From positions 1,302,001 to 1,366,000 of the forward strand of contig NW_026889786.1 of the NCBI RefSeq assembly GCF_033153115.1: a stretch of 64,000 nucleotides of DNA. Reading direction: 5' to 3'. Below the pieces are notes generated by a model. That model worked only from the letters and a program-made list of their open reading frames with translations. It was not told where the DNA came from and did not search any database. This DNA comes from Saccostrea echinata. Taxonomy: Eukaryota. The stretch's first letter is position 1. Every line of letters begins with the position of its first letter. Shown here piece by piece: positions 32,931 to 57,615 of the stretch. The position numbers and the translations under genes were made by a program.

Positions 32931-35900
32931 ATGATGAAATTTCATTCCGTGCATGGAAAATCTGTGACTCTCACAGAAGGAAAACTAGTGGCCACCAAGT
33001 CGGATGCCTCCTTTTGTCATGGTATTGTATTCAGTGACCAGCCTCTGAAGGTCAACCAGAAGGTGTCATTTGAGGTCAAAACCACTGATGCATGGAGTGG
33101 AGGAATCAGGATTGGAGTGACCTCATTTGACCCTGGAAAACTTCAAAGCTCAGATCTACCTAAGTATGCCATTCCAAGTTTGTCTAAAAGGGAAGGATTT
33201 TGGGTGTGTCCGATAAGTGAAGGTATAATCACATCAGGCTGCAAAGTGACTCTATATGTAAACAACAGGGGACAGCTACAGTTTTTTGTCAACAGTGTTT
33301 ATAAAGGAGCATGCCTTAAAGGACTTCCTATTGGGAAAACCCTGTGGCTGTGCCTCGATCTTTACGGAAACACAAAAAGTGCCAAGTTCATTAAAGCAGG
33401 TAAGTGGGTTGATGTGAGGAGTTTATTGGGCTGGTGTGCAGTGTTTATTGGCATCTTGGCAGTAGATTGCTGGGTAGATATTGATTAAGATGTCTATTAT
33501 CAATCCTGATGTACAAATCAATAGGGATGGATTGGTGCCTATTTTTCCAATACTTTTAATAATGATTAAAACTTGTCATATGGATGTTTAAAAATGAATC
33601 AAAGGTGATACATGATGATAACTTATAGCCATTATGGGTATACTTGTAATATTGTTTTGAATTTCAATACTGTACCTAAAATTTTCTAAAAGTCTCTTCT
33701 AAGCTTCCAGTTTATGTATTTCCCAGCCTACTCAAAACATTTTTTGGACCAGGTTTAAAGTGTTATTGATTCAAACACTATGCAAAGCTTTGCATTCATT
33801 CTAATTGAATAAAAAAAAATTAATTTAAAACTAAAAACAAAAAAAAAAACATTGATTCAAATGTAAAATGCAATATATTGATAAAATAAAACTTGTGTTC
33901 ATACATAAGAAAGAATGTTCAATTGAAATTTAGAAATACCCATCACTTATGAATCAGTCACTTTGCTGATACACTCATAATAAAAAATGTCTCACTTGCA
34001 AGTACCAGTTTTTGTCAAGTTCAGGTTCTTCATTGACTATTTTCATACAGAAATTGACAGTGTTTAGCTCACCTGAGCCAAGAGATCACATTACTCTACT
34101 TTTTTAGGACACCTGAGTCACTCAGATGACCTATTGCTATCTTCTTTTTTTTTTTTTTGGTCCTTGTGCGTCGGTCATAAACTTTTAATTCTATTAAACA
34201 TTTCTTCTCTTGAACTACTGAATCATGCAATTTCAACCAATTTTGGCATATAGCATCAATGGGCAAAGGTGAACAAAAATTGTGAATTTCATGGTCCCTA
34301 GATTATTCTTTGAAAATGCATTCTTTTTCTCTGCTCAGATATATTTAGAAAACATACTTAGTGGATAATTATGATGAGCAAGGAAGCCTCTTCCAAAACT
34401 GTGAATTTCTCAGCCCCTGGGTCTAGGGCCTCTGGTGCTTTTGCAGGGCTCTATTCAATTGTAGTCTACTAGGAGAAGTTATTCCCCTTTGCTATTCACA
34501 TGATAATTAAGTTAATCACTGTAAATTATGTAATTGAAAGCTCAATTCAAGAAGAGAATTATACAAGTATTTTTGTCATATATAATACAAAAATTACTTT
34601 GATAGTTCTTCATGGTCAGGTAGAGTTGTGTGTTTTTATTTGAATTTTTCTGGAGCCATATACATAATACCAGGTTCCTGTGTCAAGTCTCAACCAAAGT
34701 CTTGCTGTACATAGTCTCAGTATAAAGAACATTGTGGTCACTTAATCATGACAGGGCGTTGTGTTTACTCTCAACCCTCCTCACAAGATGTCAGGCATGT
34801 GGTCAATCAAATATCCTCCCTATTCAGGGGGTTTTAACCCCCCCAACCCCCTCCACTATAGTGAGCACTATTGGGACTGACTGCTTGATTATCTTCACCA
34901 TGCCAAACCAAAAGTCTTGTGTTTTATACAGCTCCTTTCAATGCATGCTAAACAATACATAAGCACTATAAGGCCACTTTGTCATCCTCGCCAGTAAAAT
35001 TTATGCATGTGCTAGGCACATTAATTAATATTTTACAACAGTATTAAATACTGTAAATATTTGTATTATGGAACTTGCAGTTCAACATTGGATATGCAGT
35101 ACATGTTATTGAATTATGATTATTAGATACCAGGCAAATATCATAAAACATGAATTACTTCAGAGATTTATAGGAGTTCAATGGCTTTTCATGTCTAGAA
35201 GAATACTGGGCGTAATCTAAATGCAAACAGTTTTTATCCTTGTCATGTAAATGAAAAAAAAGTCATTTTATATAGTGCACCTACTCTAAAAGTGCTGGCA
35301 GAAGCTCAATTGTAGCAGAATAAATTTTAGGCTCAAAACTGATCTTTTCGTTTGATCATGGAAACCAAACATGTTCTTGCATTCAACCTGTATTAAGTGC
35401 AGTCCTATCAATGGATCTAAAAAGTATAGTGATGCAAATTTGTAATGAACATTGTACAAAGTATTGCCGTAGAGAAAGAAACAATATGTGAAGTGGGAAA
35501 AAATCTATATCCAGATTCCAATTAATCTTCATACATGTATGCTAATTAGTGCACAAGGTCTATATGATAATGAACTTGTATTTGGAAGTACAGATCTAAA
35601 ATCGAGTTTGGATATATAGCATACCCAAGTTGTGTGGTATATAAAGAAGGGCAGTTTGTTATCCATTATTGATGAACGACCAGTGAATTTGCTTATCTTG
35701 AACACTGCATATCTATTCAATCATAATGCTATACTAGTACATGTACCGGGAAAATGATAGCCAGGCTTTGACTGTGAAAATGAGTGGGTATACATTTTAC
35801 TATTTTAATGTTGAAACAAAATATTTGTTTTAGGAATTGGTGTAATTATTTTGATTGTATTAGAGACCTTCTTTGTAGAAGTATATCTTTTAAAAGATTT

Positions 35901-57615: not shown

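What the first reader, a model, noticed from the sequence alone, without database searches (positions are those of the whole stretch)
32931..57615. Candidate new signalling system: single-chain NHR-Roc-COR-Death-TIR-CaaX protein with no LRR and no kinase
Seen: 22 in-phase exons join ORF fragments scattered over 25 kb into one ~1273-aa frame carrying NHR, Roc, COR, Death, TIR and a terminal CaaX. Known: familiar animal Roco proteins (LRRK1/2, DAPK1, MFHAS1) use LRR/ankyrin/kinase modules; Death+TIR is the MyD88 arrangement; NHR is a peptide-binding module of Neuralized/NEURL proteins; COR mediates dimerization. Inference: a self-contained sensor (NHR) - nucleotide-dependent dimerization switch (Roc-COR) - effector (Death/TIR), functionally analogous to an NLR but built on a Roco GTPase, possibly acting in bivalve innate immunity or cell death. 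I do not recall a characterised protein with this architecture, but I cannot search to confirm novelty.
Basis: partly seen in the sequence, partly recalled or inferred. Interest (0 to 1): 0.92.

Follow-up and report, generated by a model that had tools for sequence, protein, structure and literature searches.

The report
Conserved NHR-Roco-Death-TIR lipid-anchored gene
The 25-kb stretch is a real 22-exon oyster gene for a GTPase-switch protein with a neuralized-type binding domain in front and a death domain, a SARM1-like TIR domain and a lipid-anchor signal behind; it is already annotated and is found across invertebrate animals, but nobody has worked out what it does.

Summary
The 22 exons (32931-57615, + strand) are joined by 21 unique GT-AG introns. 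They reproduce, residue for residue, RefSeq XP_061191926.1, "uncharacterized protein LOC133200170 isoform X2" of Saccostrea echinata (1272 aa). Pfam finds NHR, Roc, COR-A, Death and TIR_2, and no LRR, ankyrin or kinase.

The architecture is not new to the databases. About 70 proteins from molluscs, annelids, nemerteans, a priapulid, a flatworm, a rotifer, chelicerates, a myriapod, a barnacle, echinoderms, hemichordates and amphioxus share it. These include a Saccoglossus record named "neuralized PATS1". An Aplysia immunome paper lists one member as a MyD88-like protein with a ROCO domain. I found no functional study.

Conserved in 44 or 45 of 45 orthologues are the P-loop Lys, the G3 DxxG, a Cys/His cluster after COR, a TIR Glu that aligns with the SARM1 catalytic Glu, and a C-terminal CaaL box. 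The nearest TIR structures are SARM1, TIR-1 and AbTir, not MyD88.

My reading is a lipid-anchored, GTPase-gated TIR (probably an NADase) plus a Death scaffold. Its roughly one-gene-per-species, strongly conserved pattern fits a core cell-death or signalling role better than a bivalve-specific pathogen sensor.

The parts
32931..33399 (+). Exon 1: start codon and the complete NHR (neuralized homology repeat) domain, residues 1-156
   Evidence: Pfam Neuralized 1.2e-37. 100% match to P0191 residues 1-156. Donor CAG|GTAAGT.
38103..38265 (+). Exon 2: conserved linker and Roc G1 P-loop (GQERVGKT, Lys200)
   Evidence: Lys200 is present in 45/45 orthologues.
43548..43699 (+). Exon 3: Roc switch I region (TVGID) and the start of the insert in Roc
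44187..44329 (+). Exon 4: Roc insert, conserved helix (LQEEYHKALAENIVKEL)
   Evidence: A helix is predicted in the AF2 model of the orthologue P0210.
44941..45146 (+). Exon 5: Roc insert, poorly conserved and predicted disordered
   Evidence: Mean identity 22%. pLDDT below 50.
45667..45811 (+). Exon 6: Roc G3 (DFSGH). A tandem acceptor at 45667 (isoform X1) or 45670 (isoform X2).
   Evidence: Asp413 and Gly416 are present in 45/45.
46006..46080 (+). Exon 7: Roc core strand
47807..47989 (+). Exon 8: Roc G4 (GTHRN)
   Evidence: The last G4 position is N in 24, D in 12 and another residue in 9 of 45 orthologues.
48333..48449 (+). Exon 9: end of Roc
50275..50418 (+). Exon 10: start of COR-A
50536..50742 (+). 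Exon 11: COR-A
   Evidence: Pfam COR-A 2.5e-8 on this exon alone..
50994..51149 (+). Exon 12: COR-A
51597..51726 (+). Exon 13: boundary between COR-A and COR-B
51832..51992 (+). Exon 14: COR-B
   Evidence: Structural match to LRRK1, LRRK2 and C. tepidum Roco RocCOR.
52142..52228 (+). Exon 15: variable loop in COR-B
52450..52629 (+). Exon 16: last COR-B helix and the Cys/His cluster (C873, C875, C879, H882, C887, C892, H894, C901)
   Evidence: No Pfam family matches it. It folds with pLDDT 83-88 in the orthologue model.
52751..52823 (+). Exon 17: end of the Cys/His module (C909, HRRVKT)
53612..53770 (+). Exon 18: linker and the N-terminal half of the Death domain
54238..54411 (+). Exon 19: C-terminal half of the Death domain
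   Evidence: Pfam Death 6e-6 on this exon alone. The nearest solved sequences are the p75NTR and NRADD death domains.
54776..54954 (+). Exon 20: N-terminal half of the TIR domain (FISYQW box, WMDIGQMGGGD loop)
   Evidence: Pfam TIR_2 2.1e-9..
55581..55758 (+). Exon 21: C-terminal half of the TIR domain, with the invariant Glu1119 (CNRELSLAD) and the WPPP motif
   Evidence: Pfam TIR_2 2.2e-7. Glu1119 is present in 45/45. It aligns with the SARM1 Glu through a 56%-identical paralogue.
57275..57615 (+). Exon 22: Gly-rich motif GVGGHGGTGIHAD, a helix, a disordered tail, the SCVCIIL CaaX box and the stop codon
   Evidence: Cys is at position -4 in 44/45 orthologues and the last residue is Leu in 41/45.

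Best explanation
The locus is the Saccostrea echinata gene LOC133200170. It is this species' copy of an old bilaterian family of Roco GTPases, with roughly one gene per species, built as NHR - Roc (with a ~170-aa insert) - COR-A/COR-B - Cys/His (probably zinc) module - Death - TIR - disordered tail - CxxCaaL.

Shown: the gene structure, the domain order, the wide conservation, and the invariance of the P-loop Lys, the G3 DxxG, the TIR Glu and the CaaX Cys.

Inferred mechanism: the protein is geranylgeranylated (X = Leu) and probably also acylated on the neighbouring Cys, so it sits on the cytosolic face of a membrane. The Roc-COR unit acts as a nucleotide-dependent conformational or dimerisation switch, as in other Roco proteins. 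The N-terminal NHR binds a peptide ligand or holds the protein in an inhibited state. Switching brings the Death and TIR domains together. The TIR is of the SARM1/AbTir type and keeps the catalytic Glu, so it would cleave or cyclise NAD+. The Death domain would recruit other death-fold proteins.

Because the family is so conserved and not expanded, I think a core cell-death, stress or membrane-signalling role is more likely than a lineage-specific pathogen receptor. My confidence in the identity and architecture is about 0.97. My confidence in the gated-NADase mechanism is about 0.35-0.4.
For: Gene model: P0191 maps at 100% in 22 blocks, and every intron has a unique GT-AG junction.

Domains: Pfam on P0191 gives NHR 3.7e-36, Roc 7.2e-17, COR-A 4e-19, Death 6.3e-9 and TIR_2 5.8e-22. 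All are above the curated cut-offs.

One transcript: the Magallana gigas orthologue cluster (P0188, 1273 aa) sits on assembled contigs of 4,058-6,106 nt, which leave no room for 21 introns.

Family: the same Pfam set is found in about 70 proteins from many phyla. There is one full copy in this genome.

Conservation: K200, D413, G416, E1119 and C1269 are each present in 45/45 aligned orthologues. TIR mean identity is 68%.

Fold: the AF2 model of the 84%-identical orthologue P0210 has pTM 0.64 and confident domains. Foldseek returns LRRK1, LRRK2 and C. tepidum Roco first, then SARM1 and C. elegans TIR-1 for the TIR.

TIR type: phmmer against the PDB finds AbTir, PdTIR, SARM1 and Cat1 for the TIR, and no MyD88 or TLR chain. 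The paralogue's Glu aligns with the Glu of SARM1 'HKEIV', and P0191 residues 1047-1157 align without gaps to that paralogue.

No membrane helix: the highest Kyte-Doolittle 19-residue score is 1.54.
Against: Nothing biochemical is known. GTP binding, prenylation, NADase activity and dimerisation are all inferred from motifs. The G4 guanine-contacting Asp is replaced in most orthologues (N in 24/45), so nucleotide specificity and affinity are uncertain. Keeping the Glu is necessary for TIR NADase activity but not sufficient. The COR self-association prediction gave no verdict. I could get no read-level RNA evidence for this species. NHR-less isoforms are annotated in three other oysters, so part of the protein pool may lack the proposed sensor.
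Confidence: 0.55

Rival explanations
1. It is a non-enzymatic, MyD88-like adaptor. The TIR only docks onto TLR/IL-1R-type TIR domains, the Death domain nucleates an IRAK-type death-domain assembly, and Roc-COR and NHR add regulation. This would be a GTP-regulated branch of Toll signalling.
For: Death is followed directly by TIR, as in MyD88. The Aplysia immunome paper files the Aplysia member (LOC101861518) under MyD88-like proteins and suggests a 'novel GTPase TLR signaling cascade' (PMC9334734).
Against: No MyD88 or TLR chain appears among the sequence or structure matches of the TIR. The matches are SARM1, TIR-1, AbTir, PdTIR and Cat1. The Glu at the SARM1 catalytic position is present in 45/45. 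The Death domain is closest to p75NTR and NRADD, not MyD88. TIR conservation of 68% across phyla is higher than I would expect for an adaptor that co-evolves with expanding TLR families; that expectation is my own judgement, not a measurement.
Confidence: 0.25
2. This is the reader's reading: an NLR-like pathogen or danger sensor of bivalve innate immunity. NHR recognises a microbial or viral ligand and triggers NF-kB signalling or cell death.
For: The sensor - NTPase switch - effector layout parallels STAND/NLR proteins. Roc-type 'AP-GTPases' with COR and variable effector domains are described in bacterial conflict systems (PMC8195603, PMC7159879). TIR and Death are typical immune or cell-death modules.
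Against: The family is not bivalve-specific; it ranges from rotifers to amphioxus. It is not expanded: there is one full copy here. The NHR is conserved (44% mean identity) rather than diversified, unlike receptors in an arms race. I could obtain no expression data after infection.
Confidence: 0.12
3. It is a gene-model artefact: two or three neighbouring genes (an NHR gene, a Roco gene and a Death-TIR gene) wrongly fused.
For: NHR-less isoforms are annotated in C. virginica, O. edulis and M. gigas. Intron 1 is 4.7 kb long. I have no reads for this species.
Against: The full architecture recurs in about 70 independent predictions from many phyla. Contigs of 4-6 kb carry the complete 1273-aa M. 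gigas ORF and comparable ORFs of 1233-1316 aa in other species. All 21 junctions are in phase with canonical sites. The tblastn matches of three distant orthologues are collinear across the locus.
Confidence: 0.02

Closest known systems
Roco family GTPases (LRRK1, LRRK2, DAPK1, MFHAS1; Chlorobium tepidum Roco)
   Same: It has a Roc GTPase followed by COR-A and COR-B. Pfam Roc and COR-A score above threshold. The best structural matches are LRRK1 (E 3.6e-20), LRRK2 and C. tepidum RocCOR. A Death domain lies C-terminal of COR, as in DAPK1 (own knowledge).
   Different: It has no LRR, ankyrin, kinase or WD40. It has an N-terminal NHR, a ~170-aa insert inside Roc, a Cys/His module after COR-B, a TIR effector and a CaaX end. 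The G4 Asp is not conserved. A 2014 review lists only LRRK, DAPK1 and MFHAS1 as animal ROCO genes (PMC4104024), so this family is missing from the usual list.
SARM1 / C. elegans TIR-1 and bacterial AbTir-type TIR NADases
   Same: The TIR is of the TIR_2 type. Its nearest solved sequences and structures are AbTir, PdTIR, SARM1 and TIR-1. An invariant Glu sits at the position that aligns with the SARM1 catalytic Glu.
   Different: There is no ARM or SAM domain, so any oligomerisation and auto-inhibition would have to come from Roc-COR, NHR and Death instead. Enzymatic activity is untested. A conserved Gly-rich motif (GVGGHGGxGxHAD) follows the TIR; I did not look for it in SARM1.
MyD88
   Same: A Death domain is followed directly by a TIR domain in one chain.
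   Different: The protein is about four times larger. The Death-TIR linker is only about 10 residues. The TIR and Death domains are closer in sequence to SARM1/AbTir and to p75NTR/NRADD respectively than to MyD88.
Neuralized / NEURL E3 ligases
   Same: One full NHR domain (Pfam 3.7e-36). The best PDB sequence matches are Drosophila Neuralized NHR1 entries 2yue and 4kg0 (E 1e-27).
   Different: There is no RING domain and only one NHR, so it is not an E3 ligase of that family.
Catalogued but uncharacterised orthologues: M. gigas LOC105329486 (UniProt K1QWV6), S. purpuratus LOC755988, Saccoglossus 'neuralized PATS1' NP_001161599.1, Aplysia LOC101861518
   Same: The same domain order, similar lengths (1227-1273 aa for full-length forms; the S. 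purpuratus isoforms retrieved here are 1140-1141 aa), the same invariant residues and the same CaaL end. The Aplysia gene is described only as a MyD88-like protein with a ROCO domain; I did not retrieve its sequence.
   Different: There is no difference of kind: the window's gene is the S. echinata member. Automatic UniRef names such as 'non-specific serine/threonine protein kinase' are misleading, because no kinase domain is present.

Membership tests
Roco (ROCO) GTPases | A Roc (Ras-of-complex) GTPase domain | tested here: met
   Pfam Roc PF08477 7.2e-17, 62 bits against a cut-off of 27. G1 GxxxxGK[T/S] with Lys in 45/45 and G3 DxxG in 45/45.
Roco (ROCO) GTPases | A COR domain immediately after Roc | tested here: met
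   Pfam COR-A 4e-19, 69 bits against a cut-off of 35.3. phmmer hits to C. tepidum Roco and LRRK2 across residues 551-772. Foldseek matches to RocCOR structures.
Roco (ROCO) GTPases | Canonical G4 motif with the guanine-specifying Asp | tested here: inconclusive
   The motif here is THRN. Across 45 orthologues the last position is N in 24, D in 12 and another residue in 9. GTP binding was not measured.
Roco (ROCO) GTPases | Dimerisation through COR | tested here: inconclusive
   Complex prediction with residues 551-930 in two copies scored 0.24 against a mark of 0.32. The tool gave no verdict.
LRRK / DAPK1 / MFHAS1 (the characterised animal Roco proteins) | LRR and/or ankyrin repeats, and a kinase domain (LRRK, DAPK1) | tested here: not met
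   No LRR, ankyrin, kinase or WD40 family at E<=0.05 on P0191.
TIR NADases (SARM1/AbTir type) | TIR fold with the conserved catalytic Glu | tested here: met
   TIR_2 5.8e-22. Glu1119 is present in 45/45. In the 56%-identical paralogue the same Glu aligns with the Glu of SARM1 'HKEIV'. By my count this is E642, the residue mutated in PDB entry 7cm7, whose title reads 'Sarm1 E642A'.
TIR NADases (SARM1/AbTir type) | NAD+ cleavage or cyclisation activity | not testable with these tools
   This needs an enzyme assay.
MyD88-type adaptors | Death plus TIR as the only domains, with a TIR of the adaptor type | tested here: not met
   Death is followed by TIR, but inside a 1272-aa NHR-Roco protein. No MyD88 or TLR chain is among the PDB matches of the TIR.
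Neuralized/NEURL E3 ligases | NHR domain(s) plus a C-terminal RING | tested here: not met
   NHR is present (3.7e-36) and no RING is found.
CaaX-prenylated proteins | Cys at position -4, aliphatic residues at -3 and -2, and a C-terminal X residue (Leu indicates geranylgeranylation) | tested here: met
   The protein ends ...SCVCIIL followed by a stop. Cys is at -4 in 44/45 and X is Leu in 41/45. The lipid modification itself was not tested.

The most novel reading that the evidence does not exclude
This family would be a missing animal Roco class: a membrane-anchored, GTPase-gated TIR NAD+ hydrolase or cyclase with a built-in Death scaffold. It would be a SARM1-like execution or second-messenger switch controlled by a Roc-COR unit instead of ARM-SAM. 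It is conserved across invertebrate Bilateria, and this search found none in vertebrates, insects or nematodes. That would explain why it has escaped study.
Probability: 0.3. Interest if true: 0.8.

Novelty: new variant of a known kind. Interest (0 to 1): 0.55.

Why it matters
The characterised animal Roco proteins (LRRK1, LRRK2, DAPK1, MFHAS1) signal through kinases or act as scaffolds. The known animal TIR NADase, SARM1, is gated by ARM-SAM auto-inhibition. A deeply conserved protein that joins a Roc-COR switch directly to a SARM1-like TIR and a Death domain, and ties it to a membrane, would be a natural experiment in how a G-domain can gate TIR assembly. It would also add another class to the animal Roco repertoire. 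It is testable in oysters, sea urchins, Saccoglossus and amphioxus. In practical terms, the automatic name 'non-specific serine/threonine protein kinase' given to many orthologues is wrong and should not be propagated.

Tried and rejected

Whole-protein work used the database proteins P0191, P0210 and P0188.

Short queries: exon 21 alone against the PDB found nothing. P0238 against the PDB showed only Death-domain alignments. I reached the TIR alignment with SARM1 through a single-exon paralogue instead.

Self-association: complex prediction on COR (residues 551-930, two copies) scored 0.24. The tool gave no verdict, so this is evidence neither for nor against binding.

Atlas search: the ESM Atlas look-up of the TIR plus tail returned only generic TIR_2 clusters.

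Literature: Gerdol et al. 2017 (Dev Comp Immunol, the 'ecTIR-DC' families) probably classifies this family, but it is not held in the library. The three papers that cite ecTIR-DC do not describe this architecture in the passages retrieved.

Rejected ideas: a fusion artefact (see rivals); a transmembrane protein (highest hydropathy score 1.54); membership of LRRK, DAPK1 or NEURL (defining domains are absent).
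Full report
**1. Observation**

The + strand between 32931 and 57615 holds stop-free segments whose translations look like pieces of one protein. Pfam searches on single exons, given by reference, found four domains:
- Neuralized/NHR, 1.2e-37
- COR-A, 2.5e-8
- Death, 6e-6
- the two halves of a TIR_2 domain, 2.1e-9 and 2.2e-7

A phmmer search with the NHR exon against 1.8 billion representative proteins returned several 1070-1324-aa proteins with a single N-terminal NHR. 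Every one tested carries NHR, Roc, COR-A, Death and TIR_2.

A word-indexed search with one of them found P0191. This is XP_061191926.1, 'uncharacterized protein LOC133200170 isoform X2 [Saccostrea echinata]', 1272 aa. P0191 maps onto the window in 22 blocks that cover every residue at 100% identity. For each of the 21 introns exactly one GT-AG junction reproduces the protein.

The window is contig C37:1302001-1366000 of the genome, and the full gene occurs once there. All whole-protein steps used database proteins.

**2. Is it one transcript?**

The indirect evidence is strong:
- The Magallana gigas orthologue cluster (P0188; XP_019923263.1, UniProt K1QWV6; 1273 aa; 88% identical in the NHR exon) is found on many assembled contigs of only 4,058-6,106 nt. 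These can hold the 3.8-kb ORF only if it is spliced.
- Comparable contigs exist for other species, such as P0009 (1305 aa on 4,245 nt).
- The Saccoglossus member has an NP_ accession and a GenBank protein record, and is named 'neuralized PATS1'.
- Three distant orthologues (a protein from an unnamed transcript contig, octopus, nemertean) align collinearly across the whole locus.

NHR-less isoforms are annotated in C. virginica, O. edulis and M. gigas. They begin a few residues before the exon-2 sequence. An alternative first exon is therefore likely, and exon 1 to exon 2 is the junction most worth checking with long reads.

**3. Anatomy**

On P0191, Pfam places the domains as follows:

| Domain | Residues |
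|---|---|
| NHR | 4-153 |
| Roc | 189 to about 457, in two stretches |
| COR-A | 573-731 |
| Death | 964-1038 |
| TIR_2 | 1050-1159 |

There is no LRR, ankyrin, kinase, WD40 or RING.

An AlphaFold2 model of the 84%-identical C. virginica isoform P0210 (1126 aa, 47-sequence alignment) has mean pLDDT 73.9 and pTM 0.64. It shows these features:
- confident Roc, COR-A, COR-B, Death and TIR domains
- a partly helical, partly disordered ~170-aa insert between switch I and G3 of Roc
- a compact module after the last COR-B helix
- a helix after the TIR
- a disordered tail of about 80 residues

Foldseek against the PDB gives LRRK1 (3.6e-20), LRRK2 and C. tepidum and M. barkeri Roco for the Roc-COR part. 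The next group of matches is SARM1 and C. elegans TIR-1 (about 4e-6; TM 0.72 on an isolated SARM1 TIR chain).

**4. Family and conservation**

The same architecture is present in the following groups:
- gastropods, bivalves, cephalopods and a chiton
- annelids and nemerteans
- a priapulid, Macrostomum and a rotifer
- ticks, mites and a spider
- a centipede and a barnacle
- echinoderms, hemichordates and amphioxus

This is usually one gene per species. No vertebrate, tunicate, insect, nematode or cnidarian protein with the full set appeared. The search scores only the 8000 candidates that share the most words with the query, so this absence is suggestive rather than proven.

In a 45-orthologue alignment I found the following:
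- The P-loop Lys200, G3 Asp413 and Gly416, TIR Glu1119 and the aligned CaaX Cys1269 column are present in 45/45.
- On the ungapped C-termini, Cys sits at -4 in 44/45; the barnacle is the exception.
- The CaaX end is CxxCaaL. The X residue is Leu in 41/45. A second Cys lies 2-3 residues upstream.
- The G4 motif is THR followed by N (24), D (12) or another residue (9).
- The TIR is the best conserved part, at 68% mean identity to the oyster sequence. Death follows at 58%.
- The Roc insert (22%) and the tail (14%) are the least conserved.
- No transmembrane-like segment exists.

**5. The TIR type**

phmmer of P0191 against PDB sequences finds AbTir, another bacterial TIR protein and PdTIR for the TIR domain. 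It finds p75NTR and NRADD for the Death domain.

The TIR is split between two exons, and exon 21 alone found nothing. I therefore used a paralogous TIR from the same genome that lies in a single exon (L001 450-1136; 56% identical and ungapped to P0191 1047-1157). Its PDB matches are AbTir, PdTIR, SARM1 and the CRISPR-associated TIR Cat1. In the printed alignment, the Glu of its 'CRREVSLAD' lies on the Glu of SARM1 'HKEIVTAL'.

By my count from the start of the TIR this is E642, the residue mutated in PDB entry 7cm7, 'Sarm1 E642A'. P0191 has 'CNRELSLAD' at the same place. The family therefore keeps the residue that defines catalytic TIRs. This is necessary for NADase activity but not sufficient.

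**6. Mechanism**

Shown: the domain order, the intact P-loop and G3, the conserved TIR Glu, the conserved CaaL, and the absence of a membrane helix.

Inferred from what is established for the families concerned:
- CaaX with X = Leu directs geranylgeranylation, and a nearby Cys is often acylated.
- Roc-COR tandems act as nucleotide-dependent dimerisation or conformational devices.
- TIR NADases become active when their TIR domains are brought into ordered assemblies.
- Death domains assemble homotypically.
- NHR domains bind short peptide motifs.

Put together, the most economical model is a lipid-anchored switch. Its Roc-COR state, possibly set by what the NHR binds, controls assembly of the Death-TIR end. 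The output would be NAD+ cleavage or a nucleotide signal, together with recruitment of death-fold partners.

The low copy number and strong purifying conservation argue for a core cellular role such as cell death, stress or membrane signalling. They argue against an arms-race receptor. My confidence in this mechanism is about 0.35-0.4. My confidence in the identity of the gene is about 0.97.

**7. Comparison with what is known**

It is a Roco protein by both defining features. It is not a member of LRRK, DAPK1 or MFHAS1, because their repeats and kinase are absent. A 2014 review lists only those three as animal ROCO genes (PMC4104024).

It resembles SARM1 in TIR type, but lacks the ARM and SAM domains. 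It resembles MyD88 only in the Death-TIR order. It has an NHR but no RING, so it is not a NEURL ligase.

Roco-TIR combinations as such have been noted in silico in sea anemones, Trichoplax, bacteria and C. gigas (PMC5094078). Roc-type 'AP-GTPases' with COR and variable effector domains are described in bacterial conflict systems (PMC8195603, PMC7159879).

The exact architecture is touched on once in the searchable literature. The Aplysia immunome paper lists LOC101861518 as a MyD88-like protein with a ROCO domain. Its Figure 6 legend includes NHR, ROC, COR, Death and TIR (PMC9334734). Gerdol et al. 2017 (the ecTIR-DC families) may classify the family, but I could not read that paper. I found no functional study.

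**8. Novelty and verdict**

The claim that no characterised protein has this architecture survived my searches. The gene is nonetheless already annotated. The family has been in the public databases for years and is spread across Bilateria, so it is neither new as a sequence family nor a bivalve speciality.

I rate it a new (uncharacterised) variant of known kinds, namely Roco GTPases and TIR NADases, with interest 0.55. It is a good experimental lead rather than a discovery of a new kind of system.

Earlier notes of this scan on the same window concern the TIR Glu, the THRN G4 and the CaaX. All three were checked here. The Glu and the CaaX are conserved family-wide. The G4 Asn is not a fixed feature, since a quarter of the orthologues have Asp.

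Noticed in passing
window 52450-52823 (exons 16-17; P0191 residues 873-911): There is an unnamed Cys/His module between COR-B and Death. C873, C875, H894 and C901 are present in 45/45 orthologues. C879, H882, C887 and C892 are present in 41/45 and are deleted or replaced together in the two hemichordates and two amphioxus sequences. C909 is present in 44/45. It has no Pfam hit and folds confidently in the orthologue model. It is probably a two-site zinc module.
   Followed up: partly
window 57275-57320 (P0191 residues 1160-1172): A Gly-rich motif, GVGGHGGxGxHAD, lies directly after the TIR. His1164 is present in 45/45. AlphaFold confidence is low there, and the function is unknown.
   Followed up: partly
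window 47930-47960 (Roc G4): G4 reads THRN in this oyster. Across 45 orthologues the last position is N in 24, D in 12 and another residue in 9. The guanine-contacting Asp is therefore dispensable in this family, and nucleotide specificity is an open question.
   Followed up: partly
window 45667/45670: A NAGNAG tandem acceptor (CAG|AAG|) at exon 6 explains RefSeq isoforms X1 (1273 aa) and X2 (1272 aa).
   Followed up: yes
window intron 1, 33400-38102 (by inference from P0210, P0212 and P0248): NHR-less isoforms are annotated in C. virginica, O. edulis and M. gigas. They start with 3-5 other residues before the exon-2 sequence. This suggests an alternative first exon or promoter, which I did not locate in this window.
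   Followed up: no
G000:C9:14854949-14855635 (L001 450-1136); a second copy near G000:C9:11876896-11877240: A paralogous TIR lies in a single exon, is 56% identical to this gene's TIR, and is followed by a low-complexity tail that also ends in a CaaX box (CCIL). Lipid-anchored TIR proteins may therefore be a small family in this oyster.
   Followed up: partly
G000 contigs C7, C10, C14, C15, C17, C29, C33, C38, C40 and C46: More than ten long open frames (400-468 aa, no stops) are 22-30% identical to the COR region. This suggests an expansion of other Roco-like genes, apparently poor in introns, in this genome.
   Followed up: no
window 39358-41339, 49176-50089 and 8473-9462: Tandem arrays with a period of about 146-166 bp (78-84% matches) lie in introns 2 and 9 and upstream of the gene. 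They account for the repeated ORF fragments such as '...KNLLLKNHWARK...' seen in these introns.
   Followed up: no
window 17922-18826 (- strand), 19699-25156 (+ strand), 10452-10895 (+ strand): Neighbouring gene fragments: WD40 beta-propeller exons (MABP1/WDR62-like or EML-like) on the minus strand, two exons of a GADD45GIP1/CR6-interacting factor homologue on the plus strand, and a weak Sel1-repeat match.
   Followed up: partly
database names of orthologues: Many UniRef entries for this family are auto-named 'non-specific serine/threonine protein kinase', although no kinase domain is present. One mite orthologue is named 'exostosin-1'. These are annotation errors that are likely to spread.
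   Followed up: yes
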